Shown piece by piece: positions 21,873 to 51,432 of a DNA stretch of 64,000 bases (positions are counted from its first letter, which is position 1; each line of letters opens with the position of its first letter). The translations under genes and the position numbers were made by a program. Source of the DNA: Macrostomum lignano (lineage: Eukaryota); NCBI GenBank assembly GCA_002269645.1, contig NIVC01002239.1, positions 1 to 64,000 on the forward strand, read 5' to 3'. Below the pieces are notes generated by a model. That model was not told the DNA's origin. It ran no database searches and saw nothing but the letters and a program-made list of their open reading frames with translations.

Positions 21873-22240
<368 letters not shown>

Positions 22241-22245
<5 letters not shown>

Positions 22246-24646
22246 ATAGATCAAGTAGGCGGAACCGACTTCTATCATAAGCTTATGCACCCAGTTTGAC
22301 CATAGATATCTGTTTGAAAACCCCAAGCGCAAAGCCCGGAATCAAGTCATCCTTGCCACGAAATGCACCAATTCAAATTCGCGTATATATTGAAACCTTC
22401 CTTCGTTTCCTTGTGCGAAAATGGCAAACACTGTGGCCCGATGGGGCGTTTTCCTTGTGCTCCCGGAGGCAAAGCTACGACACGAGACAAAGGGAGTGAG
22501 CATCGGTGGAATGCATCTTGATTTCTGAGCAGCAGTCAGATGCTAGCTAGAGAAGTCCATGATTTCTTCATACATACGCACAAGTAGCCAAGTCCTTCCC
22601 TGCTCCATACTGTCAACATCATTAATAATTCCGTTTAAGGTTTCTGCAAAATAAAAGCACTGCAGGTGATCCGTGCATGCAGAATTCATAGCAAAATTTA
22701 CACTGCAGTCTCATGATGTAGCTCGTAGCAAAGAAGAGAGAGTATGGCTGTTTTCCTTGTGAAATCATTGATTTATCCCAACGAATGTATGAATAGAAAT
22801 TTATTTTTTCAAAGAGAGTTTCAGCCTTGGTGGCAAAATTCACTTGGTTAGTAAAACACGTCTAAGAGGTTCGCGGTGAACATCTGATATTTTAATTTCA
22901 AGAATCTTACCATAGAGACCTGAGTGGAATGGAGACGCTTTCATAATGTCCTGTGTTTGCACGTCGTGTTTGCTTAAAAAGCAGAACCGATTTCTTTGCC
23001 ACGAACCAGCCAGCAGAAAGTTCAACTAAGGGAGACATTAGAAGCAGTGTTCTACCGGTATGGCGTGCTCCCATAGCAACCTGCATGCGCTCAGCCTCCA
23101 AAAGGCAGGAAGTCCTGTTCGACAACGTCAAATTAAAGAAGCAGCTTGCATTGGCTAAACTCACTCGTGTAACCACGCCATAGAGAAAGACGTCAAAGAC
23201 TCTACTTAAAGGGGGCCATGGTTTGCTTGTTTTCCTTTAGGATGCTCATTTTGGCAATGACAGGGTCGTGGACAGCTGTACGCTCTCAGCAACGAAGTTT
23301 TTCGTCCTTAGCAACCAACTAATTTTCAAATAAGCTTTATTCCTCATCGCATATTGCGGCTTCCTACATTAGACTTCTTTCCTTCTCTGCCAGACTCTTT
23401 CTCCATAATGTATTCTCTCGCTATTTTGTCCCACATTGCTTCGGGATGTTAGACTAGCTGCGACGATGTTGTTTGATGTGAAATTGATAGAAAAAAGGTA
23501 CCTACGAGGAAAGTTTTCATGGAATTACTTTTAAAGTGGTTTAAGCAATAGGCATATACTACTGTTGAAGTGGTTACTTGCATCGCCATTCCGCGAAAAA
23601 GAGTTGCGGCAAGAAAACTCTCTGGCTTTCTGGCTTCGCAGAAATTCACAATATGAAGAACTACCAATAAGTGCAGTTCTGTAAAGCCGAGAGATTTCAT
23701 GGGACTTCGGTTGCAGTCAGGCTGGCGAGGAAGCTAAGAAACCGTTTCTAACTCGGCCTTCCTGCTCAAGAGAGAATTTTTCCAGCTGTTCGTTAGACAA
23801 ACACACTTGGCAACATCGGCTGCCGCTGCCAGTCGCCAACGCAAGTGCGGCATATGGGAACTGGGGCGTTGCTCAGCGCAATTCGCACATTTCAACAGGT
23901 CATTCAAGTCAGTCCAGGCTTGAACCCCATTGAGCATGTTTGGGAATTCAGCGACGAGTTCAACAGGGTGCATGATTGTGAAGCAATTGTATGAGGGTCT
24001 GTCTGATAGTACATGCTATTGTTATTTTGATGTGCTGATGTGTGTGCTTTGGCGAAGATTATCTAGGTATTCTTTATTAGTTTTTGGCAAAGCATTAGGG
24101 ATAGGGTTGGACTTTAGGTACATGCATGCAGGACACGGAAATTTGGGTAGGACTTCAAAACTAGCCCTGTTCTTTGTTGGTGTTTTGTCAACCAAAATTT
24201 GGTTACTCTTCAACAACTTATACTACTTAAAGTTAGTAGCCTTTAGTCGCTTCGAATCCGCTTCGCAAATTGACTAGGTGAGCGCATGATTGGATTACGG
24301 GAAGCTTTGTTCAAGCAGTTCTCTACCTGGTAAAGCAGCACTTGCGCTTTCTCTGCCACTTCATTGGAGGCGAATCCATTTAACTCATTTCCTGACCACC
24401 CGAACAGAACAGAGAGAAGAACATTTTCTAGCCTATAGCAGCTCAAGGCTGTTGTCGGATTTTTCTATTAAAGCTTGGAGTTCTGTTCATCACAGGTTGA
24501 GTCACAGGATTGCAAGCACAGAGCTGAACTCAGTCATGAACTGCACTCTGCTGCTGGGCCTCGCCGTCTGCTGCCTGGCACTGAATAGTCTTGTCCAAGC
24601 AATCTCTGCTGATGAGGCTCTTCTAAAAGCAATGGGTCTCAAGTCC
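22241..24646 (+). repeat. Copy 2 of the 2.4-kb direct duplication
   Basis: Colinear with 19381-21789 and continues into gene A. Confidence 0.92.
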
Positions 24647-27600
24647 ATCTACAATCGAGAGGTTCGCCCGGAGCCAGACCTGGACAATGCCAACCTCATT
24701 GATGTGTCATTCAACCTGAACAGGCTGGTTAAAGTGGTACGCTCGTAATCGAACTTCTGAAACTCTTGCCTGAATAAGGATCTTACGTAAACCAGATTTT
24801 TAGATTTTTAATAAAGATTTTCTTAGTTTTTTAGCAATCAAAATCCAATATTCTCCTTCTTTTCTGGATTTTCGCTGGAGTTTGGGGTCCTACTTGGGAT
24901 CCAAAGGTCATTGACACACAAGTCATTCATATTCATCGCAAATTCTTTTCATGCTTTTCAGGATTCCGCTGCTCAAGAAATTATGCTCCAGATGTGGTTC
25001 AACTTGGTGAGTCTTCATCCAATAGACTTAGTTGGGTAGGCTCTACAATTCCCTCATGAAGATTTGATCGAGCGCAAAGATCTTCGCCCCAAACCCCGGC
25101 AGGAGTGGACGGACCCTCGGCTGGCCTGGTTGGGAAAATTCAACTCAACTTTCGACAATGTGAGCTCGATATTCGTGCCGGCAGACCTGATCTGGCAGTC
25201 CGATGTCGGCTTCTTCGATCTGTGAGACCCTTCTGCATCATTCTTTAGAGAAACTTTACGAGGAACCTGCTGACTTCATCATTTTTAAACAAATTTCCAA
25301 GGCCCACGGGCAGTGCATTCAGAAGGATGTACTTGGAACACTTTTAAATTATAAAATTATCATCACCTGAAGTCGCTTGATTTAACATTTTCCAATTTTT
25401 GGATATGAAACTTTTTCAATGCATTTTGAAATGCTACTACTCATTTTACGAGTTGTCCTTGTCCGAAATTTAAAGCTTCATTCGCATTCTAGATTGGATT
25501 TCAAGCGAACATCAAGTGAGCGAGTAGTTCTTGTTCTGAAAAACAATGGCATGGTGCAGTACTCAATCGAGGTTCTCACTCTGTCCAAGTGCGAGATGGA
25601 CATGGCCGGGTTTCCCTACGACACGCAGACCTGCACTCAGCAGGTGGGCTCGGCAGTCCAGACAACGGAGACAATCAGGCTCAAGTTGGAAATTCAGAGC
25701 GAGAGGGATACTATAACTACCTATTAGGCTAAGAATACCGACTTCTGCATTCTGAATGTGACAGCGAAACAGACGGTCGATGTTGAGTACGACAAGATCG
25801 ACTTTACTATAAAGATCAAGGTGAGTTCAACTATGAAAAAGAAAGCTAACTATCTGTTCAGTGCCCAACTGGCTGAGAATATTGGCAAGGGAATAAAAGT
25901 ATTATCTAAGCCACGAATCAAAGGGCAGAACTGCAACGCGTTTGACTCTCTCGCGAAAAGTACCTGTCTGGATTCGGTTCCGTGAGCGGTCACACAAATT
26001 TTGTGTTGCTATCCGTATGCGTTCTCAAGGTTTTGTGTCCTGGCTGGCTGTGGGTCAACCGTCATATCGCCTTGATACGGCAGAAATGTTCAAAAAGCCC
26101 CGCTAACGAAGTAACGAATGCACCTCAATTAGTCAAAAGCCAAAAAGAGTAAAATGACAGTAAAAGCACGAAATCTAGCAGCAAAGCGATCGGATTTCAA
26201 TAAAATCTCCTGAAAACTCCTGAAATTTAAAAGCCACTGATGGTAACGCTACAGAAAAATGCTTACTGTGTATTTCAGCGTCGAACCACTTTCTACGTGA
26301 TGAACCTCATCTTGCCCAGCATCCTCCTGCTCGCCATCTCAACTCTGGCCTTCTGCCTGCCGCCAGACTGCGGCGAGCGAATCTCGTTCAGCGTCACCAT
26401 CGTGCTGTCCATGTGCGTGTTCCTGCAGCTCACTAGCAACTACATACCTGCTCAAAGCAATTCCGTGCCTCTACTCAGTGAGTGCAGCTTCAGCACTTTT
26501 TCATTTAGCATCTCTGCTCACTGTCACCCGAATGTAATTTTGCATCAGAATAAAATTTTACCCTGAGCCAAGAGTCCTTTTTGGCAGTAATGTTTAAGCG
26601 CCGAAGGCAGGTGTTTTTTGGGAACTTGACCAGCTGAGCACCCCCATACTATTTACTCCCCTCACTCGAGCCCATCGCCGCGAGCACTTAATTAACCTGA
26701 GACCTGTTTTGCCAGAGAATAAGTACTTCGTTCACAGGCACAGCTACCTTCTGCTTCTCTACCTTCTGAGTGGCTAACTTCCCCTTGACCTCTGCTGTAT
26801 GGCTAACTAACAGCTAATGGCAGCTAAGCAATAATCTCAAAGGTAGTGCCCCAAACTCAATGCCAGGAAACATTACCGAACACCGAATTTCCTTTGCCGC
26901 CAGCCTACTACTGCAGCCTAGCAGTCGGCATGACGATGGTCAATGTTCTAGCGAATGCGTTCGTGTTGAACTGCCACTACCGCCGGCTGACGCAGCCCCG
27001 GGTTTCCAACTGGCTGATCCGCCTGCTGTTCCTCAACCGGTTCGTGGCCCGTCGCAGGCGGCTGTTTGGCATCGATTCGGTGAGCGGCGACGCACTCTGG
27101 CCCAGCAATTGCTAAGCATTGCTGTTGGAATAGCACGGATGTCAAAAGTTCATGGGGAATAGCTCAAATGCTACCCGATCCCTGGGACATTGTCGGGTTT
27201 TTTCAAGCTAGCTATCTGATATGTGCAAAATCTCCTTATAGCGCACTGCATGCGTTTGCTCTAGGCCTATGAAAATGTCAAAAGTGAAATTTTATTTTGC
27301 GTAGGAACTTTAGTTCCAAGAGGGTGCCCGCATGTGCACTGGCTAGCAGTATATATAGTAGATTTGATGTTGTTAGAAATCTACTCTTTGATGGAACAAT
27401 GCGCACGATGTCTCACGTGTGTGCTTTTATAGTTACCTGGACTTTTGGGTACGTAGAAACGGAAAAAGATGATTTTTTTCGCATCAAAGGCCAATAAAGC
27501 GACTTAATTTGTCTATGCTAGTTAATTGTTCCAGTGGAACTCCTCCTCTGGAGGAGAAAGGGGGTGGCAATCCCATCGCCAGAATTCCATTCCCTGAAAT

Positions 27601-28617
27601 CCATCAGCCGAAATCCCATGACTTGAATCTTATCTTTCAAATCGTCTCCAAATCCTCTATAAAACCTTTCAAATCCTTTCAAATACCAAAACTTGTTTTC
27701 CGTGTTCACGAAAACTTTATATTAAATGGCCCAGCTACTTAACAAATCCCAGACCTTTTTGTTTGGAGTTTGAAATTGAACTTTGAGCAGCCGTTAAATA
27801 GATTTCCAACTAAAAGCAGTATCTTTGCACAATCACATGACAAAATGAGAGTTAGAAAGGCTTATAGCCATTTTTTAAACCTAGAATCATAATTACGCAC
27901 GTATTTAAAGAGGTAGACTACACCTTTTCACGTTCAATTTTGAACAAAGTCCAGTTCTAAAAAAACTAGCGGAAATTCAATTCAGACAATTCAGACTGGG
28001 GACAATTTTGTCTATGGCTAAACCTCGCTTCCGTAGCAGAATGTTTTGAACTGGGGTTTGTTGCCCCAGTCTGAATTGTCTGAATTGAATTTCCGCTAGT
28101 TTTTTTAGAACTGGACTTTGTTCAAAATTGAACGTGAAAAGGTGTAGTATTGTTGCATGCACTAGGATCACCCGAAACAGTGAAAACCCGACATGGTAAA
28201 TAAAGCCAGACGGCCCAACTCAGGCTTCAATCGTTTTGTTTGAGCAATCTCACGCTAGTTAACCAAACAATTTCGTTTCAAGTACATGTACTTTTCAGAC
28301 GAGTTGATGCCTCAGTCCTCTTTACTGATTTTCAGCGCACCAGAAAGGCCGTCAACGCTCTGGATGGCAGAGCGGAGGGCTGTCAGAAACCTCCGGGCGA
28401 GTCAGCTGAAGGCAAGGACTCGCCATTGCCGGATGCCGCTCCCAGAAGGCTCGACTCGGCTTTCCTGCATTGTCATGACAACGATTGGGATGTTGTAGTC
28501 TCAGTCACGGACACTGTTTTCTTTCTGCTGTATTTTTTCTTGACCACGGCCATCATCGTGACTCTGGTGATAATCGAGACCAGGAACTCCAAGGTGAACT
28601 GCATCACTGGTGACTGA
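24536..28617 (+). pseudogene. Cys-loop ligand-gated ion channel subunit, gene A (7 exons, a single in-frame TAG at 25725-25727)
   Basis: Exons 24536-24736, 24962-25006, 25103-25221, 25493-25820, 26279-26477, 26904-27079 and 28336-28617. Signal peptide, YNREVRP, WTDPRLAW, Cys-loop CEMDMAGFPYDTQTC, M1-M2 FCLPPDCGERISFSVTIVLSMCVFLQ, M3 and M4. The TAG sits where paralogs have Leu; otherwise the frame is intact. Confidence 0.85.
27917..28148. mobile_element. MITE-like hairpin element (85-bp inverted arms, 62-bp loop) in gene A intron 6
   Basis: 27917-28001 is the reverse complement of 28064-28148; termini acTACACC...GGTGTAgt. Confidence 0.8.
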
Positions 28618-28828
28618 CGTGGGGCAACTTCTCCGACGAGACAATAGAGAAACTAATGACTGACTGATGGAATGAATATTTAAGTTTGATCTATAAGTTT
28701 GTCTTCGTTTTGCAGTGCAGGAGAGAAATTCAGAAATCACTGGCGAACCTGATTACGAATATAAAGAAGATTCGTACATTGCCTATGAGCGTATAGAAAA
28801 GGTTATAGTGTAAAGATGCTTTCGAGCT

Positions 28829-31230: not shown

Positions 31231-31534
31231 AGCATTGTAATTCAGGTTTATCTCGCTCGTGACCTTGCAAAGAAAGGTCTGACAGACAATTTGTGTTGAT
31301 TCCAGCCTCTTTTTGGCCTTGTTTCTCAAGTAGCATCCGTACTTTAACGGCTATAGTCACATTGTTTGAAGAAGGCAAGCAGGAGTGACAGCAAAGAGAG
31401 ACCCAATGAGATCCCTTCAGACAGTGTAAGTGGGCCGCATCCTTGAAGCAGATAGTTATTCACGAAATAGTTTCTCCAACACCTTGGCTGCCAGCCAGAA
31501 CTGAACAGAATATAGCGAACTGTGACTCACTAGC

Positions 31535-33207
31535 ATGCTGTGGGCTGCACTATCAAGCTTCATCGCTCTCTTGCTCTGCCGTGCCGCAGCGGCAGCGGCT
31601 GCCTCGGCTTCTCCAGACGAGGCCTTGGAATTGGCGCTGAAACTGAAATCCGCCTACAACAAGGACGCCAGGCCGCCACCTGACAACGGTTCGGCAAACT
31701 TGGTGACCGTCTTTTTCAACCTGAATAATTTGGTTCGAGTGGTGAGCCTCCAATTTTAATGTGTTTGTGAGCCGATATCATTGCTCTGAGCATGCAGTCT
31801 AGCTTGGATCTTTCCAACCCGCAGGACTCGGCAGCGCAGGAGATCATGCTGCAGGTCTGGTTCAGCCTGGTGAGACTTCTTGTTATTCGATGCGCAGCAA
31901 TCTCGTAATAAAGTCGAAAAATGTCTTATTAAGATTTGGGGGCCGTAGCCTAGTGGGTCTAGCGCGGTGCTCTTATGTGCCAGCGGCCCAGGCTCGATTC
32001 CTGTGCGTATGAATGCGAACGTATCCGCGCGCTTGTGTGCCAAGGATCACTGTAGTGTACAGGACGAAAAATTCAAAGATTGCGTAATTTTAGGGGGTGC
32101 TACAGTGGTCCTTGTTGTGTGCCTGCTCAGAGGAGTCGGCGGAATGGGCAGTAATGCCTCTCGCCGGTTGTGTGACAATGTTCACCTGAAGTGCGCCAGG
32201 GTGCACACAGCCCCGAGTCCCTGCCTCTAACTAAAAAACTAAACTTATAAAGATTTCATCTACGTCGGATGATACGCGACCATTTCATAGGTTAAGTGTA
32301 TTAAAGCTCACAGCAGTAAAATTTACCAACACACAAATGTCTCAAGCAACTAGCATTTTTAAAGAAACAACGAGGCTTTGGATGGACGCCTATCTGCAAC
32401 TGTCAAGTATTTACGCTTTTTTCCTTCCCAGTTTTCCACAATATCCGAATCTGCATGATAAGAGTTAAAAAGTAACAAATACAAGAGTTAAGACACTCAT
32501 AGATAGCAACAACCTTCTAACTAAGAGACGATACTTGGGTAAGTGCATTAGCGCTTCCAGCGTATGTAAAAACTATCGATTTTTTCGAATAAATATCTCA
32601 TGAAAGACAATTCAATGGGTTTGCATGGCATCACGGAAGCTTGTTTACGTACTCGTACGTGCCAACACTATTCCCTGCAGTACTGGTTTGACAGCCGCTT
32701 GGCCTGGAAAGGAAAATTCAACTCCAGCTTTGACAACGTGAGCTCCATTTTCGTGCCAGCCGACCTGCTCTGGCAACCCGACGTGGCCTTTTATGACCTG
32801 TAAGTTCGTCCGTACGAACGATTGATGGCACTGATAAAGGTAGAGAAGTCACTTGTAGATCACAGACACTATAGTACCTGGATAGGCCACTCAGTACATT
32901 TGAGTATAAACTTTGAGTTGAGTATGAGATAATTAGAAGCACTTAAATGTAGTTTAGGTCAAGACTCACCCCTAGCCTCTCTCAATCTTCCGACCGCGTC
33001 TTTACACGCTTATTTACGTTTTCATTTTTTTGTCATTTTACGATATCTTTTATTTTCTATGCTTCCTAAATATAAGATATATAATATATAGTATAATTGA
33101 TTACACCTGCCACAATAGGCAGATGTGCAACTGACTGCTCAGCTATTTTCAGTCATTGCTATCTGAAGGCGCGTACGGCTATTCAGTCCAAGGAAATGGG
33201 AGGGTCG

Positions 33208-33252
<45 letters not shown>

Positions 33253-35430
33253 AATAATCAGAAAGGACTTTCTTAAGCTCATTAGCATCGTAATGAACAA
33301 TGCATTCTAGTCTGGACCTGCGTCGAACATCCAGCGAAAAGATCGTGTTGGTTGTCAAAAGCGACGGCCTGGTGCAGTACACATCGGAGCTGCTCACCCA
33401 TTCCAAGTGCGAAATGAATATGGCTGAGTTTCCTTACGACACGCAGAGCTGTCACCAGCGGGTGTCCTCGGTGGTGCACACGAACGAGACAATCGCGTTG
33501 CGCATTAGGGAATCGAAACCCGGGGACTCGCTGACGGACTTTCTGGTCAAAAATATCGACTTCTGCATTGTGAATGTCAGTACTGCTAAGTCCATTGACG
33601 TGATCTACGATTTTGTGGAGCTCCGTGTTGATATCAAGGTTCGGTCCCAGTTAGAGGTTACATTTGCCCATGAATGCTTGTTTGATGCGGTCCGTTGGTG
33701 ATAGATGTCTTTAATGGTGGATGTCTTTGTGATGGATGTCTTTGTGATGGATGTCTTTGTGATGGATGTCTCTGTGATGGATGTCTCTGTGATGGATGTC
33801 CTTGTGATGGATGTCCTTGTGATGGATGTCTTTGTGATGGATGTCTTTGTGATGGATGTCTTTGTGATGGATGTCTTTGTGATGGATGTCTCTGTGATGG
33901 ATGTCTTTGTGATGGATGTCTTTGATGCATGGATGCCTTTGTGATGGATTTCTTTGATGCATGGATGCCTTTGTGATGGATGTCTCTGTGATGGATGTCT
34001 TTGTGATGGATTTCTTTGATGCATAACAAGAGGCTGATGGAGTGATCATGCATGCAGATATTTAGATAGCATAGCACTGTACTAGAGCATCTGTGGGCTA
34101 GCGAAAAGATGTCACATAATGTAGGACTTACTGAGAATTCCAGAATTTTCCATATCTAGCTCAAGGTTAAAATTTTAATGAGAATAATTTTGCATTCATT
34201 CTTAACTCCCGAAAATTATTGACAGCGGAAAACTACGTTCTACATGATGAACCTAATTCTGCCCAGCTTCCTACTGCTCGCCATCTCAACTCTGGCCTTC
34301 TGTCTCCCACCGGAATGTGGAGAGAGATTGTCCCTGAGCATCACCATCGTGCTGTCCATGTGCGTGTTTCTGCAGCTGACTGGAAACTTCACGCCAACAC
34401 AGGGAGACTCGGTGCCTCTTCTAAGTGAGTTCTTCGTTTTGCCGCAGTAGAAATGTGTCAAGTGTCATGGGGCTCATGGAGGGCTCATAGGGCAGTTGCT
34501 AAGATTTCAAAGGCTCATAGGGAACTGCAGGAATTCTTGGGCTCATGGAGAATCGATGAAATGCCACGGTTCATGGGGGGAATTGCTGAAATTCTGTGGC
34601 TCATGTGTTCAGATGCTTTGAGCCAAAGCCCATAGGGGATCTGATCTTTTAGGCTAGATATTCAGGGCGGATGCTTTTTTGGTTCTAACATCATTTTCCT
34701 TAAAAGATTGACAATAGTGACTGTACAAGGTTAAAAGCCACACGTAGTTTATTCAAAAAAAGATTCTTTCCTTTGTTGCCTCCCCAACGGGGGGGGGGCA
34801 GACGAAATTGCTAGTTGCAGTCTAAATCTTCTTAAAGAACAGCAGCAGAAAGTGTGTTGCTATTAGAAGAAATTGCTTGCAACATTGCAGCCTGGTACTT
34901 CAGCCTCGCGGTGCTTCTGACCATGGCTAACCTGGTTGCCAATGCCTTCGTTCTGAGCTGCCACTTTGAGCAGTTTTCTGAGAACGCTCGAGTCCCCGGC
35001 AGTCTCACTCGGCTGCTGTTTCTCAATAGGCTCTTCTGCGGCCATCCGTCTCGTCGAGAATCTCCGTCGGCACGAAATTCCAATGTGGTGATCGAGCCAA
35101 CTGCTGCTGAAGTGCGTGACCAACAATCATTTACTGTGGATTGTTGATTAGCTTTTGCACAGGTGCATGCATTCACATATTTCATTCCAACTCTAGAACA
35201 CGTCCTCCGACGGAACAGAACTTCGCGTCATCTCTCGGTTAGGAAAAGCCGAATCTGAAACAACGATGCAACCCCCAAGTTTCAAAAGTGACTGGAGCGC
35301 CGTTGTGACCGCCGCTGACCGCTGCTTTTTTGCCTTCTTCTTCTCGTTGACAATGTCGCTAGCGCTGGCGATTGCGATTCTGGATGCCATGAACTCCAAG
35401 ACCAGCTGCATCGTGGGCAAGAATAATTAA
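31535..35430 (+). CDS. Cys-loop ligand-gated ion channel subunit, gene B (7 exons, apparently intact)
   Basis: Exons 31535-31741, 31825-31869, 32681-32799, 33311-33638, 34226-34424, 34891-~35111 (donor uncertain) and 35197-35430. Internal exon sizes 45/119/328/199 match gene A. Motifs WQPDV, CEMNMAEFPYDTQSC, PPECGERLSLSITIVLSMCVFLQ, and M4 DRCFFAFFFSL. Confidence 0.88.
31938..32243 (+). mobile_element. tRNA-derived SINE, copy 2, in gene B intron 2
   Basis: A-box TAGCCTAGTGG, B-box GGCTCGATTCC, A-rich tail, and TSD-like CTTATTAAGATTT (31925-31937) / CTTATAAAGATTT (32244-32256). Confidence 0.8.
33715..34020. repeat. 15-bp minisatellite (GATGGATGTCTTTGT) in gene B intron 4
   Basis: Directly visible. 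Confidence 0.93.
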
Positions 35431-41139: not shown

Positions 41140-43605
41140 ATGCCGCAGTCTCCGCTATCAAGCTTCATAGTTTTCTTGCTCTGCCGTGCCGCGGCGGCTG
41201 CCTCAGTGTCCCCGGATGAGGCCCTGAAAACGGCGCTGAATTTAAATTCCGACTACAACAAAGACGTCCGGCCGCCACCGGACAACGGCTCAGCCAACTT
41301 GGTGACCGTCTTGTTCAACTTGAAAAGCCTGGCTCATGTGGTGAGTACTTCGGCTTTGTCGATTTTTTGTGAGAACACGTTGAATTTTCGAGCAGATCGT
41401 GAGCATTAAATTATTTCTAACCAAACAATGAAGGACTCGGCAACGCAGGAGATCGTGCTGCAACCCTGGTTCAATTTGGTACGTGACTCATTCTTTTTAT
41501 TAGAGGCAGGGGGGTTGTGTGCACCCTGGCGCAATTTAAGCGACATAGGCACACAACCGGCGAGAGGCATTACTGCCCATTCCGCCGATTCCCCTGAGCA
41601 GGCATACAAGCGCGCGGATACGTTACGCAGGAACACCCTCACACAGGAGTGTACAGCGGCACCAACATTATTTATTGTTAGGCATGTACACTTCACTGCG
41701 CCTTGGGGGGGTTGGCTCTCAAGGCCGTTAATTGCACAAGCGAGCCAAGCCAAGATTCCAATCCAGCCCCAAATTAATGTGGCTGCACTTGGAATCGAGC
41801 CTGGGTCGCGGCACACCAGAGCAGCTGCGCTACCGCTGGGCTACGGCCCCCCCTGTACGTGACTCATAAGTTCAGTGCTGCCGCAGAGACATTGACATAT
41901 CGAGTTTTATTGCATCATACTCACGGTGCAGCCATGAGCTATCGATTCATTTAATTTGCACTTTCACTACAGTACTAGCGAGACAGCCGCCTGGCCTGGA
42001 AAGGAAAATTCAACTCTACCTTCGATAACGTGAGCTCCATTTTTGTACCAGCCAGTCTGCTCTGGCAACCGGATGTGGCCTTCTGCAACCTGTAAGTGCG
42101 ACACTTTTTCCTTGGGCTTGATCATTCCTATGCAATTGCAGCCATACCGCTTTGCTAAGTCTCCCAATGGCACCCCGATTGTTCTCTTAGAGAAACTTCA
42201 AGATAATGGAGTAACGGTGACATTCATCTAATGGTACTCATGTTGACCTTTCTCATACTCACCTTTCAGCCTGCACTTCCGGCGCACCTCCAGCGATAAA
42301 GTTTTCCTGACTGTGAGCAGCGACGGCATGGTGCTGTTCCTTGTTGAGCTGCTCTCCTGGTCCAAGTGCGAAATGAATATGGCCAACTTTTCCTATGACA
42401 TGCAGATCTGCCACCAGCGCGTATCTTCGGTGGTGCACACGAGAAAAACCACTGCGCATCGAGCCTGGACCACCTGGAATCACGCCTTCCCTCTTCAAGA
42501 ACCACGACTTCTGCGTGATGAACGTCAGCGTTTCAAATTCTATCGATAAGTGGAACTACGATATTGTTCAGCTGCAGGTGGAAATAAAGGTAGAAACTTC
42601 TCAGAATTTGGTTGAGTTGGAACGGGGATCACACACTTTTTGTGGACTCCCCTGTCATAGTCCCCGTTTTTTCGCAGAGCCAGTTTCACCTTTGACACTT
42701 TCAGCGTAAAGCACTATTCTACTTCATGAACCTGATCATTCGAGTCTCGTGCTGCTCTACATCTCTACCCTGGTCTTCTGCCTGCCGCCCGAGTGCGGAG
42801 AGCGAATATCATTGAGATTCACCATCGTGCTGTCTATGTGCGTGTTCCTGCAGCTCAGCAGCAACTATATGCCTCCACAGGGGGACTCTGTGCCTCTGCT
42901 CAGTGAGTTTCGAGCTAATTTCACTCCAACACTTTGTTCGCTGATAGTGAACTACAGGCTGGAATATTGAGACTCATGACCTATTTGTCCTCCTCCAATT
43001 TCCAGCCTGGTACTTCAGCCTCGCGGTCTTTCTGACAATGCTTCACTTGATTGCCAACATTTTCGTACTGAGCTGCTACTTTGAGCATTCGTCCGAGAAT
43101 GAGCATACCAAAGTCCCAAGCCGGCTAACGCGACTTCTGTTTCTCAATAAGTTTGAATGCGCCCGGCTGCAGTGCAGAATGTGCTACCAGGTTCGAAACC
43201 ACGGCGAAACCGCCGCTGTACGGAGCTCGGTGAGAGTAAGGGAGATACGGAGACCTGGGTTGGATTTTGTTAAGCCTGCCAAGCCTGTGTCGGATTTGGC
43301 AGACCTGCAAGTTTCTGTGTCCATTTGCGGTTAAAAATTGGCACCCCATTCGCAGGAATCCAACGAGAGCGAGTTGAACGTCGTCTCGCCCAGGCGACCA
43401 GCTACGCCAAGTCAACCGCAGGCGGAGCAGACTCCGCGTTGCCGGGACAACGACCCTCGCAAAGAATGGATCCCCATTGCTGTTCGCCGCCGACCGCTGC
43501 TTCTTCGCTGTCTTCTTCAGCCTGAAGCTGGCGCTGACGCTGACGCTGTTAATCCTGGAGATCACGAACTCGCGGACCAACTGCGACATGTCGAGTAATG
43601 ATTGA
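41140..43605 (+). pseudogene. Cys-loop channel paralog D, disabled
   Basis: Exons 41140-41340, 41434-41478, 41973-42091, 42270-42589, 42705-42902, 43006-43229 and 43356-43605. TAG replaces the conserved Trp at 41976-41978; exon 4 is 320 nt (vs 328), exon 5 is 198 nt (vs 199), and there is a further frameshift near 43487 before M4. Confidence 0.87.
41492..41854 (-). mobile_element. tRNA-derived SINE, copy 3 (most complete), in gene D intron 2
   Basis: Perfect 13-bp TSD GTACGTGACTCAT at 41479-41491 and 41855-41867; on the - strand, head GGGGCCGTAGCCCAGCGG...GGCTCGATTCC and an A-rich tail. Confidence 0.88.
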
Positions 43606-44552: not shown

Positions 44553-45585
44553 TCAAAGGCAACTCTCGTTAAAAGCACCAGCAAAACGCGAACCAGCCCG
44601 CACAGAATCAGCAGATGGAAGGTAGGCAGTCACAGCATCACTTCGCCAGTCACCGATGCACTTCACCTCCTGAACAGATAGTCCGAGACGGTAGGCCCAG
44701 GTGGCACCACCTCTGCGCAGGCTGTGCGCTGAGAAAGAACGAGCGTCCTGCTCAGCAGTTGCTAGGCAGCGCTTGAGGAACCTGTCGAATCTTGAGGCAG
44801 ACAGGACAACAGAGGATCCGCTCGCCAACTGGTAGGAGAACACAGGCTGCCTGCAGCCAAGCTTGCTGACACGGAGGTGACCCTCTAGCGCAGCCACTGG
44901 GCAAAGCGGATGTCCTTCTTTTAGCCTTGGAAGCAACACCCGGTGCAGCTTCGCGCCGAACTGATTCGTCTTGCCATAACTGACAGAGAGCACAACCCCC
45001 TTCGGGTGGCGTTGAAAGGCTGAGACGGAAATCGGTGAAGCGGACTGCTGACTGGGCAGGAGACTGGAGCGCCGAAACATCCCCCACCAAGCAGAGCCAG
45101 CAGACTCTGTCAAGCGAACTGCTCGAGTTAAGCCGGTTTTTCACAGACAGCAGCATCGCAGGCGAGATCGGCAGCTTCCGTCTTGGTCGCTGGCCCATCC
45201 TCCGTTTAGCGCCGCGAACGAGCAGTGAGACCAGGTGGTGTTTTGTTAGGTCCTCAGCACCACAGGCTTTGAACCAGCTGGACAGTGCACTGACATGGAC
45301 ACGCAGACTGTTGAACGATCTCAGGCGGCATTCGACCAGGTGAGCCAGGTAGTTGAGTAGCACCGACCGGTCGGATCGAGCCGGGTTGGTCCCGTTCTCG
45401 TTGCAGAAGCTGTGCCAGGACCGGACGGCCGATGAGATCGCCCTGCGTGACTGCGGTGCGTATGCTGCGGCGAGGAGGCTGGAGGCGGCGGCGCCGAGGG
45501 TCGGCGTTGCAGGGAGGCGGCCTGCGAAAATAAAAAACGGGAGGCAAAAACAGAAAACGCGTGATCCGAAAACTCCACAGGGCAA
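44553..45585 (-). pseudogene. Ngaro ORF3, tyrosine recombinase, one frameshift near 45080
   Basis: N-terminal core-binding region AYAPQSRRAISSAVRSWHSFC, RKLPISP, and catalytic end FSAHSLRRGGATWAY..IGDWRSDAVTAY (HxxR, W, Y). Confidence 0.9.
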
Positions 45586-47231
45586 ACTGGTACAGACCCG
45601 TAAACACGGAAAATAAAATTAAGCAACTCATGACGCGAGTGCAGGCGGGACCCTGCATCAGCAAACAGCTGATAAGCACCAGGAACGTGAAAGACCTCAA
45701 ATTCAACGTCAAAACGCAGACAGAGCAACGCCAGACTGCAGCAACCACATCAGACGCGAGTCCTTGGAGACACCTCGCCTTAGAATCCAACACGCCGTCT
45801 CATTGTCGCAGTACACAGCAAGCCGACAACCAGCCAAGGATTGGCCCCATCTCAAAACAGCCAGCAATATAACCACAGCCTCCTTGTAATTGATGCAGTA
45901 ATTCTGAAAAACACCATTTGCGTCGATCTGCCAGTCAATAAAGCACCAATCACGAATCCCATCACCGTCACGGAGCACCGCCGCGGCGCCTGAAGACGAC
46001 GAGTCAGTCTCTATGGCAACACAAGCCCTCGGCGAAGTCCACAGGCCAACACCGATGCGATGTTGCAAAGCCAACCGCCACCAGGAGAGGTGGTGCACCA
46101 CGGAGGGACTAACAAGAACCCTGTCATGAGGCCGATGCAGCTTGTTAACAATGTCGATAAGAGGTCGGAGGAAAACTCTCCCGTGCCGAACAACTTGCGA
46201 CGCCCAGTTTAACTTGCCGATCAACTTCTGCAAACACGACTTTGACAGCCTTTTCTTCGAAGAGCAGAGGGATAAAACATGCAACAAGTCTTGGACTTTT
46301 TCGGCAGGAAGAGACATCTGGCCTGCCACGCTATCAAATAAAATGCCCAGAAAGGTCATCCGCGTTGTCGGCGGAACACACTTGCTACGGTTAACGGTGA
46401 AGCCTAGCCGCTCGAGCAGATCGATGAGATGGTTGTAGAACTTCCAGCAGGACTCCAGATCTCCACAAAGGCGAAGTCATCCATGTAGGCCTCCATAGCG
46501 TAGAAACCATGCTTTAACATCATAAAACGCACAGCTTGGCTCAGCTCGTAAAAGCAGAAGACGGAAGCCGAAGCACCAAACGGGAGCCGCGTGTCGTACA
46601 GGTACACTGGCTGGCCCTCGCCTTGGAGCTGAATCTTCATGCCTGTGACCCGGTGGTCATCAGGGTGCACACCACATGAACGATATGCTTGCGACAGATC
46701 CACTTTGCACATGTACGCGCCGCTGTACAGCTTCGAGGCAAAGTTGCTGGCCGAAGTAAAACGCAACTTCCGTTTCGACTCAAAGAAATCATTCACAGAG
46801 GCGCCAGTTGGCAGGCTGCAGTCGTGAATAAGGCGGATGGAAGACGAATCCGCCTTAGGGATCGCACCAAGTGCACTAACGATGAGCGGCCGGTTGCCTG
46901 CCTGGCAGCGCCTGTAGCGGTCCTGCTTGAGCTCCTGGCGCACCTGGGCCTCAACAGCTTGCTGGTGAATGGTAGCTGATCTGTGATTTGCCATCTCAGT
47001 GTGGTTCTTACAATCCATCACTTTATTAGTAATTCGAAAGCCATTCTTCACACCATCGAGCACGAACCTGACACGGTCCTCCGGCATCTCGGTCCCAGCC
47101 AGCTCTTCCCGCCAAACCGCAAACACAAGGTCGCTCGACAACTCAGTTGAACTCGGGTCACATAGGGGGAGCTCCCCCATGGGGGCACAGGAGGGCGACC
47201 CGACGGCAGACATTGAGTCCTGTGCCCCCAC
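45560..47231 (-). pseudogene. Ngaro ORF2, reverse transcriptase + RNase H, with frameshifts near 46460 and 45730
   Basis: IRLIHDCS, KVDLSQAYR, LPFGASASVFCF, YMDDF; then TFLGILFDS, LIGKLNWAS, IETDSS, INYKEAVVI, CDNET, HVPGAYQLFADAGSR. The 3' end is approximate. Confidence 0.88.
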
Positions 47232-47239
47232 CTCGCACG

Positions 47240-48331
47240 CTAGTTTTTTGAAAATTGGCCTGGGTCCCCATCAGCGTGGGCTCGGGCTTCAGAGTGCGGC
47301 TGTGAGCACCTTCGGCACTGATGGGCGAAGCGGCAGTGAGTTCTGTTGCAGCCGCTAAGACTGTTGAAGTCGAAACAGACAGGTGGCTGCGTTCGCTTTT
47401 TAGGCGCTGTTGCGTTTATCATTTTTGTTGGTGCCATCAAGTGTGTTGCCACCAGACCCAGGTCTGCGCTAACAGCGCTCCACCGCGTTCCATCATGCTG
47501 GAGAAGCCGACATTCGTCATCATATCTCATGACTTTAGTGCGATCGAAGCCTAAATCTAGCAGGTCACCAATTCTAGCGTTATGTCGGAGATGATCGATC
47601 AACTCGGATGAATCGATTCTGCCATCAACAATGCGCAGCAGTTTGCCATCACGCAGCATTTGCACCAGTAAGTTACAGCTACCGGAGATGAAATCGCCAA
47701 ACGACAGTGACTCGGGACTGACGTGTCTCAACCTCTCTGGCTTTGCCGCTCCCACAACAGACTGGCTTCCTTGTCTCCGCTTACGCTCACTGATAAAATC
47801 AACGACTCTGTACACCGCCGGCGCCTGAGCATGCGAAGTTGCAGCCCCAGCCTGCCCGAGTATACACTCGCCAACCAAATCATGCCACTCACCGGGAGTC
47901 TGATCACGTTCTCTCGCAGCCGCCGTGCCACTGTGACGCGCTTCAGCGAGCTCGGCTTCGAGCTGAGCCTCTCTTTTTTTCAGGTCCAGCAGCCGAATGC
48001 GCAGTTCAGTCTCTCGCAGCTGATCCTCGAGACCGCCTCCCGTCGCCGCCCGACCCTCGGCCGAGGCGCCCACCGCCGGTAGCATCTCGTCCTCAGGTGG
48101 AGCCAGACTTAGCTCGGGTGCGCCCGCATTCGTCGGTGATGTCTTGTCATCTTGAGCACGACGAGATGAGCCTCTGTCCTGCTCCAACGCCTGCCGCTCA
48201 AGCTCCTTGGGAATGCTGAGTTTTAGACGACTTGTTAGCTCTTGCTTATTGCCATTAGTAGGCAGGCCGCGCTCACTAAGGGCTTCTCGTAGCGCTTTGT
48301 TAGTTGCGGGCAGTACAAGGCTATCTGCCAT
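47240..48331 (-). CDS. Ngaro ORF1 (gag-like): N-terminal SAP-like motif, coiled coil, C-terminal Cys/His zinc fingers
   Basis: 363-aa ORF starting at an ATG just after repeat A1; LREALSERGLPTNGNKQELTSRL and CFDFNSLSGCNRTHCRFAHQCRRCSQPH. Confidence 0.85.
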   Translation of the reverse strand: MADSLVLPATNKALREALSERGLPTNGNKQELTSRLKLSIPKELERQALEQDRGSSRRAQDDKTSPTNAGAPELSLAPPEDEMLPAVGASAEGRAATGGGLEDQLRETELRIRLLDLKKREAQLEAELAEARHSGTAAARERDQTPGEWHDLVGECILGQAGAATSHAQAPAVYRVVDFISERKRRQGSQSVVGAAKPERLRHVSPESLSFGDFISGSCNLLVQMLRDGKLLRIVDGRIDSSELIDHLRHNARIGDLLDLGFDRTKVMRYDDECRLLQHDGTRWSAVSADLGLVATHLMAPTKMINATAPKKRTQPPVCFDFNSLSGCNRTHCRFAHQCRRCSQPHSEARAHADGDPGQFSKN

Positions 48332-49005: not shown

Positions 49006-51432
49006 ATGCTGCTACTAGGCCTAATTTTGATCTGCGCTGTCACCGCGACCGCCACGGTGCCAGATGTCTCCTCTGATGAGCGAATTGCCGCGGCACTGCG
49101 CTTAAAGTCTGCCAACGGCTACAACTCGGATGTGAGACCGCCACCGGATAATGGGACGGCTAATCTGGTCCGGGTGCACACCAACTTTAATAGTCTGGTG
49201 GCTGTCGTGAGTTTTGGACGATATCAACTAATGAACTCGACATATGTACGCAAATGTTCCCACATTTACTCATTAATTATTCATTATTTCTGCTGTTCAG
49301 AATTCCGCATCTCAGGAGGTCAGTCTACTCCTGTGGCTTACACTGGTAAGACATATTTAGAGACCGCGAATCACTCTCTAATATTCTGCAGATTTTTCAG
49401 GATCAGCAACAGGTAAAAAGTCATAAACTTTTTTCCAGTCCTGGACAGACCGCCGACTTGCCTGGCACGGTCGCTTCAACGACAGTTTGGACAGCGAGAC
49501 GGCGGTCTACTTTCCGGCCAGGCTGCTGTGGCTACCGGATGTGTCTTTCATCGATCTGTGAGACCGGGATGTGTTCGTTACCATTTTGATTCTCACTAGC
49601 TGCTCTGTTCTACTAGGTAGATACTCGTTTGTGTATTAATTAATATAAATGAAAAAAAATCAATGAGTCCATTGGTTGTTTATACGAGTGTACAGTCTGC
49701 AATGTGGATACCCACTTTGCTTTTGTATATTCCTCTAACTGGTAAGTAGAAGCCCTCTATAGAATATTACTGGGACTTTGTACAACATTTTTCTTGCGGA
49801 TTCAACGAGTTGACGATGCGGCATTACTGAAGCATTTTAAGAGTAAGCAAATCGTGTGTCTGAACTGCATGGTTAATGGAAGCTCTAATAGACGTTACTA
49901 AACACAAGAGCAATAAAGAAGCAATCCACGGGATGCTTGCAACGTTACACTGTCCAACCAAAACTTGCAGCTTGTTCATACAGCGGGTGTCATTTAGCAA
50001 CGCAATGGCTCACGTTAGCTCTCAGGGACCGGTAATGTACACCTCCCAGTACGTGATTACCAGCAAGTGCCCAATGAGCATGTTCGAGTTTCCCTATGAC
50101 AAGCAGCGCTGCGTAGTGCCCATCTCGTCAGCCATTCATTCGAAGCAGGTGCTGGCTTTGCACATCGGAGCCTACCTAGAGAACGACTCCATCACGAAGT
50201 ACCTGGCCCGCAACGACGAGTTTTGCATTACAGGAGCGACAATCAGGAAGACTGTGGACTACTACTTTGATATTCTGCAGTTTGCCATCACTTTCAAGGT
50301 AAGAATATTGCGTCTGTATCTAAAAAATTTAATTGGCTTGCAAAATTTTTAGGCAACATCACGTTCCAATATTTTTTTTCAGAGACGGCCCATTTTCTAC
50401 GTGATAAACCTAATCCTGCCCAGCCTCCTGCTGCTCGCCATCTCCACCGTCACCTTCCGACTGCCACCGGACTGCGGCGAGCGGATGTCATTCAGCATCA
50501 CCATCGTGCTGTCCATGTGCGTGTTCCTGCAGATGGTGAATGAGCACACGCCCACGCAGAGTGAATCCGTCCCTCTGCTAAGTGAGTTCTGTGGACATAA
50601 ATCCAGATATCTGCTGCAGTTAATTGCACAGGAGTTGTGTCACTCGACAAAAAACGATATAAATCTATTCGTTTATGATTTACGTTTATGTTGATGAAAA
50701 TGATTTGTAATGATTTTTGAGTAACAACAGCAAAGTTACTCAAGTTAAAATTCGCAAAAGAAATTTAGCTATAAACTTAGAGTGGCTTGGGTTATCACGT
50801 TCTTTGTTGAGTTGTTTTTTAATGCGAGTCTATCTGCATACCAGACGACCTTGTGAATGAATGACTGCATACTTACTTGCCGGACCTCGTACGAGCTAGT
50901 TTGTTGTTTATTCTTCTTATCAATGTAGCACGAGCTCCGGCATCCTTTACTTGTACCCACGGCTTTGTATGTACCACTTCCTCTCGACGTTAACCCACTC
51001 GATTTCAAATTTTTCTCATAGGCACTCGCCCACTCTCTTCTATTTCCTGGTCCAGCCTGCTACTGCACTCTGGCGGTGGTGATGACAATGACCGTCGTCT
51101 TGGGCAACGCCTTCGTTCTCAGCTGCCACAGCCGGTGTTGCCGCTCCGCTCCCCCGGGACGTCTGCTCCGGACGCTGTTCCTTCACTCGTTCGTCGCTCG
51201 TCGGAGCCGTCGGCAGCCGGAAGCCGACGGTTCAGTCCGGCAGAGCTTGTCGCCCGACAACGAGTCTGAGACCGCCTGCGGGAACGCTCTGCGCTGTCAA
51301 TGGAGCACCATAATTTCAGGCGTTGACACCTGCCTGTTTGCGTTCTATTTTGGCATCACCGTGTCTTTGGTGATAGCACTGGCCGCTATTGGACTTGTTA
51401 CAGATAGCCAGAAGTGCATCAATGAGGACTAA
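49006..51432 (+). CDS. Cys-loop ligand-gated ion channel subunit, gene E (6 exons, intact)
   Basis: Exons 49006-49206, 49301-49345, 49439-49557, 49971-50298, 50383-50581 and 51056-51432, with sizes 45/119/328/199 conserved. Motifs WLPDV, CPMSMFEFPYDKQRC, PPDCGERMSFSITIVLSMCVFLQ; M3 and M4 lie in one exon. Confidence 0.9.

What the first reader, a model, noticed from the sequence alone, without database searches (positions are those of the whole stretch)
24536..51432. Tandem array of five divergent orphan Cys-loop channel subunits: candidate lineage-specific sensory receptor family
Seen: five same-strand paralogs over 27 kb with identical internal exon sizes (45/119/328/199), signal peptides, a C-x13-C loop and a PPxCGER M1-M2 linker, yet substantially diverged extracellular domains and mixed intact/disabled status. 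Established: Glu at -1' marks cation-selective pentameric channels, and clustered birth-and-death expansions of nAChR-like genes have produced chemotactile receptors in cephalopods. Inference: an independent, possibly undescribed expansion co-opted for chemical or pH sensing, with subunits able to form heteropentamers.
Basis: partly seen in the sequence, partly recalled or inferred. Interest (0 to 1): 0.8.

Follow-up and report, generated by a model that had tools for sequence, protein, structure and literature searches.

The report
Flatworm tandem array of nicotinic-like channel genes
This stretch of the flatworm Macrostomum lignano genome holds five tandem copies (two intact, three broken) of a species-restricted, divergent nicotinic-receptor-like cation channel subunit that has lost the usual acetylcholine-binding residues; this is a familiar kind of gene-family expansion in this animal group, and nothing here shows a sensory role.

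Summary
Five same-strand Cys-loop receptor genes lie at 24536-51432. c2 (450 aa) and c5 (422 aa) are intact. c1 has one TAG. c3 lacks exons 3, 5 and most of 6. c4 has one TAG and two frameshifts. Internal exons are 45/119/328/199 nt in c1, c2 and c5.

The window is Macrostomum lignano. It is 98.4% identical to GenBank contig NIVC01003108.1, and the genes already exist as unnamed public models (A0A1I8GYC2, PAA53260.1).

An exhaustive HMMER search of 1.84 billion representatives found relatives with at least 31% identity only in M. lignano. Everything else is at most about 30% identical and comes from many phyla. The core family has 90/100 NJ bootstrap support.

The family keeps the Cys-loop, the GER (-1' Glu) cation filter and 9' Leu. 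It lacks the loop-B Trp and the loop-C Cys-Cys, and loop C is 7 residues shorter. Pocket loops are 21-26% conserved against 75% for M2. dN/dS is 0.13-0.34 and dS is saturated.

Best reading: old, constrained subunits of cation channels that are unlikely to use a canonical ACh site. The sensory role is untested analogy. This is a new member of a known kind (lophotrochozoan orphan nAChR-like expansions).

The parts
24536..28617 (+). c1: seven-exon gene, open except for one premature stop. Exons: 24536-24736, 24962-25006 (45), 25103-25221 (119), 25493-25820 (328, with TAG at 25725-25727), 26279-26477 (199), 26904-27079 (M3), 28336-28617 (M4 plus stop). The last intron boundaries are inferred.
   Evidence: The counterpart in GenBank contig NIVC01003108.1 (PAA53260.1) reads TTG (Leu) at this codon, but that contig lacks the 1.7 kb that holds the M4 exon.
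31535..35430 (+). c2: intact seven-exon gene, 450 aa. Exons: 31535-31741, 31825-31869, 32681-32799, 33311-33638, 34226-34424, 34891-35111, 35197-35430.
   Evidence: It is 97% identical to UniProt A0A1I8GYC2 (P0001), whose model uses the same last intron. P0045 is 100% identical to its C-terminal 140 aa.
36245..37798 (+). c3: truncated pseudogene. Exon 1 is 36245-36448, exon 2 is 36728-36772 (45) and exon 4 is 36910-37237 (328). An M4 remnant lies at about 37603-37725. Exon 3 (119 nt), exon 5 (M1-M2) and most of the M3 exon are deleted.
   Evidence: Joining exon 2 to exon 4 is out of frame.
41140..43602 (+). c4: pseudogene with splice sites kept. Exon 1 is 41140-41340. Exon 2 is 41434-41478. 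Exon 3 is 41973-42091 (119 nt, Trp codon changed to TAG at 41976-41978). Exon 4 is 42270-42589 (320 nt, frameshifted). Exon 5 is 42705-42902 (198 nt, 1-nt deletion near 42736). The M3 exon starts at 43006 and an M4 remnant lies at about 43464-43584.
   Evidence: The Cys-loop Pro is lost (FSYD). The public fused model P0006 reads Trp where the window has TAG.
49006..51432 (+). c5: intact six-exon gene, 422 aa, the most divergent copy, with a short M3-M4 loop. Exons: 49006-49206, 49301-49345, 49439-49557, 49971-50298, 50383-50581, 51056-51432.
   Evidence: Pfam LBD plus TM domains, PDB matches. It is 94-98% identical to part of the fused model A0A1I8GX25 (P0006).
44553..48331 (-). DIRS-like retroelement inserted between c4 and c5. 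It is not part of the gene family but lies inside the reported span.
   Evidence: SAP-containing gag-like ORF, RVT_1, RT_RNaseH and Phage_integrase (tyrosine recombinase) ORFs in that order on the - strand. The RVT_1 (22.3 vs 29.6 bits) and Phage_integrase (23.3 vs 27.1 bits) hits are below Pfam's curated cut-offs.

Best explanation
The locus is a tandem array, shaped by birth and death of copies, from a Macrostomum lignano-restricted clade of nicotinic-receptor-like Cys-loop subunits. The intact genes c2 and c5 encode non-alpha-type subunits with the standard layout: signal peptide, N-terminal helix, beta-sandwich extracellular domain with a C-x13-C loop, M1-M4, and a short cytoplasmic loop. 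These subunits would assemble into pentameric cation-selective channels. The evidence for cation selectivity is the G-E-R filter with Glu at -1', together with 2' Ser, 6' Thr, 9' Leu and 13' Val in M2.

The canonical neurotransmitter site is dismantled on the principal face. There is no loop-B Trp for a cation-pi contact, no loop-C Cys-Cys, and loop C is 7 residues shorter. The pocket loops are the most variable parts of the protein.

I therefore infer that ACh does not gate these subunits through a canonical site. Either an unidentified, possibly subunit-specific ligand gates them, or they supply only the complementary face in heteromers.

Shown: gene structures, family membership, taxonomic restriction, loss of binding residues, purifying selection, pseudogenisation of three copies.

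Inferred: pentamer assembly, cation selectivity, a non-ACh agonist.

Unknown: the ligand, the expressing cells, the physiological role.

The confidence of 0.6 refers to the full statement including the non-ACh inference. That these are M. lignano-restricted divergent cation-type pLGIC subunit genes, two intact and three broken, I hold at about 0.9.
For: Gene models and lesions.

Family identity: Pfam LBD and TM domains. PDB sequence matches are beta2 2.7e-38, then 5-HT3A and alpha7. The AF2 model of the c2 counterpart has pLDDT 78 and a pLGIC fold, with TM-score about 0.8 (normalised by target) to alpha7, muscle beta and 5-HT3A.

Species: 98.4% nucleotide identity to M. lignano contig NIVC01003108.1, and UniProt and GenBank names.

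Restriction of the family: exhaustive HMMER gave 13,677 hits, but only M. lignano proteins at 31% identity or more; all others were about 30% or less. The core clade has 90/100 NJ bootstrap support.

Binding site and pore residues: alignment. Pocket loops are 21-26% identical against M2 at 75%.

Constraint: dN/dS is 0.13-0.34 with saturated dS. Similarity between copies is confined to exons.

Transcription: the GenBank Mlig_3_7 annotation is built from RNA-seq transcripts (PMC5730564), and it includes the c1 counterpart PAA53260.1 and the related PAA50078.1.
Against: No functional or expression data exist for c2 or c5 themselves. No Logan or transcriptome-derived proteins matching them were found, though the word-indexed searches were insensitive.

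The loop-D Trp is conserved and the best PDB sequence matches are non-alpha beta subunits. Both fit an accessory role in ACh-gated heteromers.

High variability of the pocket loops could reflect relaxed constraint rather than ligand diversification.

The phylogeny is NJ on the top 150 representatives only. It has no curated reference set and no ML.

Clustering at 50% identity could hide orthologues from congeners inside clusters represented by M. lignano proteins.
Confidence: 0.6

Rival explanations
1. Beta-like accessory subunits. The proteins never form the principal face of a binding site. They co-assemble with canonical alpha subunits encoded elsewhere, giving ordinary ACh-gated heteromeric nAChRs with varied kinetics or pharmacology.
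For: The top PDB sequence matches are non-alpha subunits: beta2, muscle beta and beta4. The loop-D Trp of the complementary face is conserved in c1, c2 and c5. Lack of the Cys-Cys pair is what defines non-alpha subunits. The pore and the Cys-loop are conventional.
Against: Identity to any beta subunit is only about 25-30%. In the alignment, beta2 keeps the loop-B Trp that this family lacks. Loop C is shorter than in the alpha-like outgroups by 7 residues. The family is diversified and restricted to one lineage, which is unusual for obligate structural partners. Foldseek shows no preference for beta over alpha7 or 5-HT3A.
Confidence: 0.25
2. One reading: an independent co-option of nAChR-like channels as peripheral chemical, pH or contact sensors, analogous to cephalopod chemotactile receptors.
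For: The family shares several features with chemotactile receptors (CRs): a tandem array, loss of ACh-binding residues, cation-type pore, variable pocket loops and lineage restriction (CR properties from PMC11526382). M. lignano is a free-living marine interstitial worm with ciliated sensory cells (my own background knowledge).
Against: There are no expression data. The family is small and the duplicates are old. The only selection test was pairwise dN/dS by region, and it stays well below 1. Three of the five local copies are dead. The same features also describe many lophotrochozoan orphan nAChR-like genes with no known sensory role (PMC6896357, PMC10338036).
Confidence: 0.15
3. The whole array is a decaying relic. 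Even c2 and c5 are unexpressed or non-functional, and their open frames are only residual.
For: Three of the five copies are disabled. The c1 and c4 lesions differ between haplotypes, which suggests ongoing decay. The region is dense in repeats and transposable elements. No GenBank transcript-based model was recovered for c2 or c5.
Against: c2 and c5 keep complete ORFs and all splice sites although dS is saturated, and dN/dS is 0.13-0.34. M2 is 75% conserved across the family. The c1 counterpart has transcript support.
Confidence: 0.07

Closest known systems
Lineage-specific tandem expansions of divergent nAChR-like genes in lophotrochozoans (Jiao et al. 2019, PMC6896357)
   Same: Same superfamily and cation-type pore. 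Same organisation in same-strand tandem arrays with pseudogenised members. High sequence divergence and unknown ligands.
   Different: The mollusc expansions are very large (99-217 genes in bivalves) and largely intron-poor, arising by retroposition. This family is small, keeps 6-7 exons including a 45-nt micro-exon, and is in a flatworm, a phylum that paper does not cover.
Alpo4, orphan nAChR-like receptor of the annelid Alvinella pompejana (PMC10338036)
   Same: An isolated, fast-evolving lophotrochozoan nAChR-like subunit without the loop-C Cys-Cys. It is not activated by ACh or 5-HT and remains an orphan.
   Different: Alpo4 keeps the aromatic cage, including loop-B W159. The Macrostomum family has lost the loop-B Trp and has a truncated loop C.
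Cephalopod chemotactile receptors (CRs; van Giesen 2020, Allard 2023, Kang 2023, as summarised in PMC11526382)
   Same: Derived from nAChRs, clustered expansion, do not bind ACh, non-selective cation channels, form homo- or heteropentamers.
   Different: CRs have shown sucker sensory expression, hydrophobic agonists and diversifying selection in the pocket. None of this is shown here. The origin is independent: the Macrostomum clade is monophyletic and contains only M. lignano proteins. No CR sequence was compared directly.
Vertebrate non-alpha neuronal subunits (beta2, beta4) and muscle beta
   Same: Best sequence matches in the PDB. No vicinal cysteines. PxDCGE(K/R) M1-M2 linker. Loop-D Trp.
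   Different: Only about 25-30% identity. In the alignment, beta2 keeps the loop-B Trp. The cytoplasmic loop here is much shorter. There is no orthology.
[quoted passage not shown]
   Same: Flatworm Cys-loop receptors of the nicotinic branch.
   Different: ACCs carry an anion motif (PAR or PAK), whereas this family has GER. No proteins from parasitic flatworms or planarians turned up among the roughly 30 close hits whose source species I looked up.

Membership tests
Pentameric ligand-gated ion channel (Cys-loop receptor) superfamily | Neur_chan_LBD plus Neur_chan_memb domain architecture | tested here: met
   c5: PF02931 6.2e-28 and PF02932 1e-20, both above the curated cut-offs.
Pentameric ligand-gated ion channel (Cys-loop receptor) superfamily | C-x13-C loop with an F/Y-P-x-D core | tested here: met
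   Present in all five copies. c4 has FSYD, with the Pro lost.
Pentameric ligand-gated ion channel (Cys-loop receptor) superfamily | Beta-sandwich extracellular domain followed by four transmembrane helices | tested here: met
   AF2 model of P0001 (the c2 counterpart): pLDDT 78; strands at 145-319 and helices at 322-344, 351-371, 383-411 and 488-527. Foldseek TM-score about 0.8 (normalised by target) to alpha7, muscle beta and 5-HT3A.
Cation-selective nAChR/5-HT3 branch | Glu at -1' (the G-E-K/R motif) rather than P-A-R/K before M2 | tested here: met
   GER aligns with the GEK of alpha-like outgroups and of beta2. Ion selectivity itself was not measured.
Canonical ACh-binding (alpha-type) nAChR subunit | Vicinal Cys-Cys at the tip of loop C | tested here: not met
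   Absent in every family member, and loop C is 7 residues shorter than in the aligned alpha9/alpha10/alpha7-like proteins.
Canonical ACh-binding (alpha-type) nAChR subunit | Loop-B Trp (the cation-pi residue) and loop-A Tyr | tested here: not met
   The loop-B position holds A, V, I, Q, M or L across the family. The loop-A position holds F, Y, I, C, L, D or M across the family; only c2 and P0004 keep Tyr.
Canonical ACh-binding (alpha-type) nAChR subunit | Orthology to a conserved bilaterian nAChR clade | tested here: not met
   The nearest sequences outside Macrostomum are about 30% identical or less, come from cnidarians to chordates, and are equidistant (Kimura distance 1.55 or more, against 1.0 or less within the core). 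Core clade bootstrap is 90/100. The tree is NJ only.
Cephalopod chemotactile receptors | Membership of the cephalopod CR clade | not tested
   No CR sequence was available for direct comparison. No chemotactile receptor appears among the best 60 PDB sequence matches or the top 50 Foldseek matches. The clade contains only M. lignano proteins, which implies an independent origin.
Cephalopod chemotactile receptors | Expression in peripheral sensory cells and gating by environmental (hydrophobic) ligands | not testable with these tools
   This needs in situ or single-cell data and electrophysiology.
Flatworm acetylcholine-gated chloride channels (ACCs) | Anion-selectivity motif (PAR or PAK) before M2 | tested here: not met
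   The family has (P/A)(D/E)(C/S)G(E/D)R. ACC motif as given in PMC9874803.
Lophotrochozoan expanded nAChR-like genes (as defined by Jiao et al. 2019) | Tandem arrays of divergent nAChR-like genes specific to one lineage | tested here: met
   Five copies here. A related subfamily locus has three tandem copies on each of three contigs. Several public models are fused multi-copy predictions.
Lophotrochozoan expanded nAChR-like genes (as defined by Jiao et al. 2019) | Intron-poor or retroposed gene structure | tested here: not met
   The genes have 6-7 coding exons with conserved phases and sizes.

The most novel reading that the evidence does not exclude
The Macrostomum clade is a second, independent case of nicotinic-type channels being turned into environmental chemoreceptors, after the cephalopod chemotactile receptors. 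On this reading the variable pocket loops tune different subunits to different external ligands in epidermal sensory cells of a free-living flatworm.
Probability: 0.12. Interest if true: 0.75.

Novelty: new member of a known kind. Interest (0 to 1): 0.35.

Why it matters
If these subunits prove to be gated by something other than ACh, they would add a flatworm example to the list of nAChR-derived orphan or sensory channels. They would do so in a species that can be made transgenic (PMC5730564), where knock-outs, reporters and electrophysiology are feasible.

In practical terms, the analysis gives corrected gene models. Public predictions miss the 45-nt micro-exon, or they fuse neighbouring genes together. 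The analysis also shows which copies are dead.

Without expression or ligand data, this remains an ordinary example of the nicotinic-like gene expansions common in lophotrochozoans.

Tried and rejected
I used a profile of P0001-P0004 instead.
- The word-indexed search for homologous proteins returned only 4 hits and 7 hits. It missed known family members, so it says nothing about family size or about transcript-derived (Logan) copies.
- Literature searches for Macrostomum with nicotinic, Cys-loop or pLGIC terms, and for the gene ids Mlig027167 and Mlig024351, found no description of the family.
- I looked for further copies in the window and found none apart from a 111-nt duplicate of c1 exon 1 at an assembly gap.
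- I considered c3 as a secreted AChBP-like ECD-only protein and rejected it. Exon 3 is missing, and joining exon 2 to exon 4 breaks the frame.
- I considered recent segmental duplication and rejected it. Copies share no intron or intergenic similarity and dS is saturated.
- I considered anion selectivity, as in the ACCs, and rejected it because of the GER motif.
- I did not enter reference sequences (CRT1, ZAC, DEG-3) from memory, so I made no direct tree against those clades.
Full report
WHAT IS THERE

The window is eukaryotic and rich in repeats. On the + strand between 24536 and 51432 there are five clusters of exon-like reading frames. Each carries the hallmarks of a Cys-loop receptor. tblastn with the two complete proteins finds exactly these five clusters and nothing else in the 64 kb.

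I built the gene models from AG/GT-flanked exons with consistent phases.

- c2 (31535-35430) has seven exons and an intact 450-aa ORF.
- c5 (49006-51432) has six exons and an intact 422-aa ORF.
- c1 (24536-28617) has the same seven-exon structure, but its 328-nt exon carries a TAG at 25725-25727.
- c3 (36245 to about 37798) keeps exon 1, the 45-nt exon, the 328-nt exon and an M4 remnant. It has lost the 119-nt exon, the M1-M2 exon and most of the M3 exon. Joining exon 2 to exon 4 is out of frame.
- c4 (41140 to about 43602) keeps its splice sites. It has a Trp codon changed to TAG at 41976-41978, a 320-nt instead of 328-nt exon 4, and a 198-nt instead of 199-nt exon 5. Its Cys-loop Pro is replaced (FSYD).

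The internal exon sizes 45/119/328/199 therefore hold exactly for c1, c2 and c5, and partly for c3 and c4.

WHAT THE PROTEINS ARE

c5 matches Pfam Neur_chan_LBD (6e-28) and Neur_chan_memb (1e-20). Its best solved-structure sequence matches are nAChR beta2 (2.7e-38), muscle beta, beta4 and alpha4, then 5-HT3A and alpha7.

An AlphaFold2 model of the public counterpart of c2 has mean pLDDT 78. It shows an N-terminal helix, a beta sandwich and four transmembrane helices. Foldseek places it equally close to alpha7, muscle beta and 5-HT3A, with TM-score about 0.8 normalised by the target.

WHERE IT COMES FROM AND WHETHER IT IS ALREADY KNOWN

- P0001 (UniProt A0A1I8GYC2) is c2 at 97% identity, with a spurious N-terminal extension taken from an upstream ORF.
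- P0045 (A0A1I8HJY9) is identical to the C-terminus of c2.
- P0006 (A0A1I8GX25, 1792 aa) is a fused model that runs over c4, c5 and downstream genes.
- PAA53260.1 (BOX15_Mlig027167g2) is the counterpart of c1.

The GenBank contig NIVC01003108.1 is 98.4% identical to window 12.9-33.2 kb. The window is therefore another haplotype, duplicated block or assembly of M. lignano. That genome is known to contain about 180 Mb of duplicated blocks at 95% identity or more (PMC5730564).

In the GenBank contig the c1 codon is TTG (Leu) where the window has TAG. That contig, however, lacks window 27864-29572, which holds c1's M4 exon. Likewise, the public model reads Trp where the window's c4 has TAG. The lesions are thus partly haplotype-specific, as expected for copies under relaxed constraint.

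The GenBank annotation was derived from a genome-guided RNA-seq transcriptome (PMC5730564), so at least the c1 counterpart is transcribed.

I found no paper that describes this family. The genes are predicted in public annotations but uncharacterised.

HOW RESTRICTED THE FAMILY IS

I searched 1.84 billion representative proteins with a profile of four family members. This gave 13,677 hits at E of 1e-3 or better.

Only nine representatives are close: P0001-P0007, P0009 and P0045. They share 31-97% identity with c2 or c5 and score at least 198 BLASTP bits. All nine are from M. lignano.

The next hits are about 30% identical or less. They come from a brachiopod, bivalves, gastropods, a nemertean, an annelid, a coral, a sea cucumber, amphioxus and a hemichordate. 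Their automated names are alpha7/9/10-like, and one is a fish 5-HT3A.

In an NJ tree of 153 sequences (323 columns) the core family has 90/100 bootstrap support. In 96/100 replicates the smallest clade holding the full 13-sequence family set, P0009 included, also takes in P0043, another M. lignano protein; that 13-sequence set on its own has only 37/100 support.

Kimura distances are 1.0 or less within the core and 1.55 or more to any outside sequence. The genes are therefore not ordinary orthologues of canonical nAChRs.

Two caveats apply. The tree is NJ only and has no curated reference set. Clustering at 50% identity could also hide orthologues from congeners.

Tandem organisation recurs elsewhere in the family. 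The P0009/PAA50078 locus holds three same-strand copies on each of three near-identical contigs, and only one is annotated. Several public models are multi-copy fusions.

WHAT THE SEQUENCE SAYS ABOUT MECHANISM

I aligned the family with the nearest alpha-like proteins.

Features kept:
- the Cys-loop with FPxD;
- the loop-D Trp, readable only in c1, c2, c5 and the c4-like part of P0006, because the other public models lack the 45-nt exon that encodes it;
- the M1-M2 linker PPxCGER, with Glu at -1';
- in M2, 2' Ser, 6' Thr, 9' Leu and 13' Val.

This is the cation-channel signature. The role of the -1' Glu is established knowledge and is summarised in PMC9874803.

Features lost:
- the loop-B Trp, replaced by A, V, I, Q, M or L;
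- the loop-C Cys-Cys;
- seven residues of loop C;
- a conserved loop-A Tyr, which is now variable.

Across nine family members the pocket-forming segments are the least conserved. Mean pairwise identity is 0.21 for loop B, 0.25 for loop C, 0.26 for loop E and 0.24 for loop F. By comparison, the Cys-loop is 0.57, M1 is 0.64 and M2 is 0.75.

Pairwise Nei-Gojobori estimates give dN/dS of 0.15-0.34 in the ECD and 0.13-0.25 in the M1-M2 exon. dS is about 2 in the ECD, which is saturated. Similarity between copies is confined to exons. The duplications are old, and the intact copies have been under purifying selection.

INTERPRETATION

The best-supported reading is as follows. c2 and c5 encode non-alpha-type subunits of cation-selective pentameric channels. 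They belong to a clade restricted to Macrostomum, whose canonical ACh site has been dismantled. Either an unidentified ligand gates them, or they act only as complementary or accessory subunits.

The array has evolved by tandem duplication followed by loss. Three of the five local copies are dead, and a DIRS-like retroelement lies between c4 and c5.

It rests only on analogy with cephalopod chemotactile receptors (PMC11526382). No expression, ligand or positive-selection evidence supports it.

The rival reading of a beta-like accessory subunit is favoured by two facts: the best PDB matches are beta subunits, and the loop-D Trp is conserved. It cannot be excluded from sequence alone.

COMPARISON WITH WHAT IS KNOWN

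Lineage-specific tandem arrays of divergent, orphan nAChR-like genes are well documented in molluscs and annelids (PMC6896357). Orphan members such as Alpo4 have been studied structurally (PMC10338036). Cephalopod chemotactile receptors show that such genes can become chemoreceptors.

The present family differs from these in five ways:
- it is in a flatworm, a phylum that PMC6896357 does not cover; schistosomes have only about 21 LGICs (PMC9874803);
- it is small;
- it is intron-rich rather than retroposed;
- it retains a 45-nt micro-exon, which from my own knowledge corresponds to the conserved 45-bp exon of vertebrate nAChR genes;
- it has lost even the loop-B Trp that Alpo4 retains.

VERDICT

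It is a new member of a known kind. Interest is moderate to low (0.35), because specialists expect such expansions in lophotrochozoans. It would rise sharply if sensory expression or a non-cholinergic agonist were shown.

Noticed in passing
window 44553-48331 (- strand): A DIRS-like retroelement lies between c4 and c5. Its ORFs are a gag-like ORF with a SAP domain (47240-48331), reverse transcriptase (46404-47231), RNase H (45709-46359) and a tyrosine recombinase (44553-45585). The RT and recombinase hits fall below Pfam's curated cut-offs. Another unclassified ORF block on the + strand at 38596-39875 had no Pfam hit.
   Followed up: partly
window 18868-21789 and 21873-24675, with an N gap at 21790-21872: Both stretches align to a single stretch of GenBank contig NIVC01003108.1. 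A copy of the first 111 nt of c1 exon 1 sits at 21679-21789, directly before the 83-N gap. This is probably an assembly duplication at a scaffold join, but it could be a real about 2.8-kb tandem duplication.
   Followed up: partly
window 27864-29572 compared with L004 13319-13327: A 1.7-kb segment containing c1's M4 exon is present in the window and absent from the 98.4%-identical GenBank contig. That contig also diverges completely from the window after window position 33255, just before c2 exon 4. This is structural polymorphism or an assembly difference within the array.
   Followed up: partly
window 54372-55124 and 62260-63138 (- strand): Two C-type lectin domain ORFs lie downstream of the array; the 62260-63138 hit (20.8 bits) is just below Pfam's 22.6-bit cut-off. 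Another family member, P0007 (A0A1I8GVX6), is annotated as a fusion with a homologous lectin, at 77-100% identity to 61580-63081 on the - strand. This suggests that a receptor-plus-lectin neighbourhood was duplicated.
   Followed up: no
window 1-24000 and 59443-60961: The flanks are mostly satellites and microsatellites. A 20/40-nt purine-rich array lies at 9776-12178. There are 39-nt (7520-8421), 41-nt (5094-5720), 31-nt (8840-9209) and 23-nt (17669-18347) arrays, (CAGA)n at 18868-19385 and 21873-22246, and (AGAT)n at 59443-60961.
   Followed up: no
window 33698-34018 (c2 intron 4): A 15-nt minisatellite (GTGATGGATGTCTTT, about 21 copies) lies inside the intron between the 328-nt and 199-nt exons of c2. 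It creates long spurious ORFs on both strands.
   Followed up: no
L001-L003 (GCA_002269645.1 contigs NIVC01000984.1, NIVC01003722.1, NIVC01003094.1): The related PAA50078/P0009 subfamily forms three same-strand tandem copies on each of three near-identical contigs. Only one copy per contig is annotated.
   Followed up: partly
public models P0002-P0005, P0007, P0009 compared with window exons 24962-25006, 31825-31869 and 49301-49345: Most public gene models of the family lack the 15 residues encoded by the 45-nt micro-exon, which shows as a gap in the alignment. The P0001 model adds a 90-aa N-terminal extension taken from the ORF at 30898-31170. Both look like annotation artefacts.
   Followed up: partly
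exon 5 of c1, c2, c4 and c5 (for example 26279-26477, 50383-50581): The M1-M2 exon has a much lower dS (0.67-0.90) than the ECD exons (about 1.8-2.0). Its nucleotide identity is up to 85% between c1 and c5, which are otherwise the most distant pair. Possible causes are gene conversion or strong codon or nucleotide constraint.
   Followed up: no
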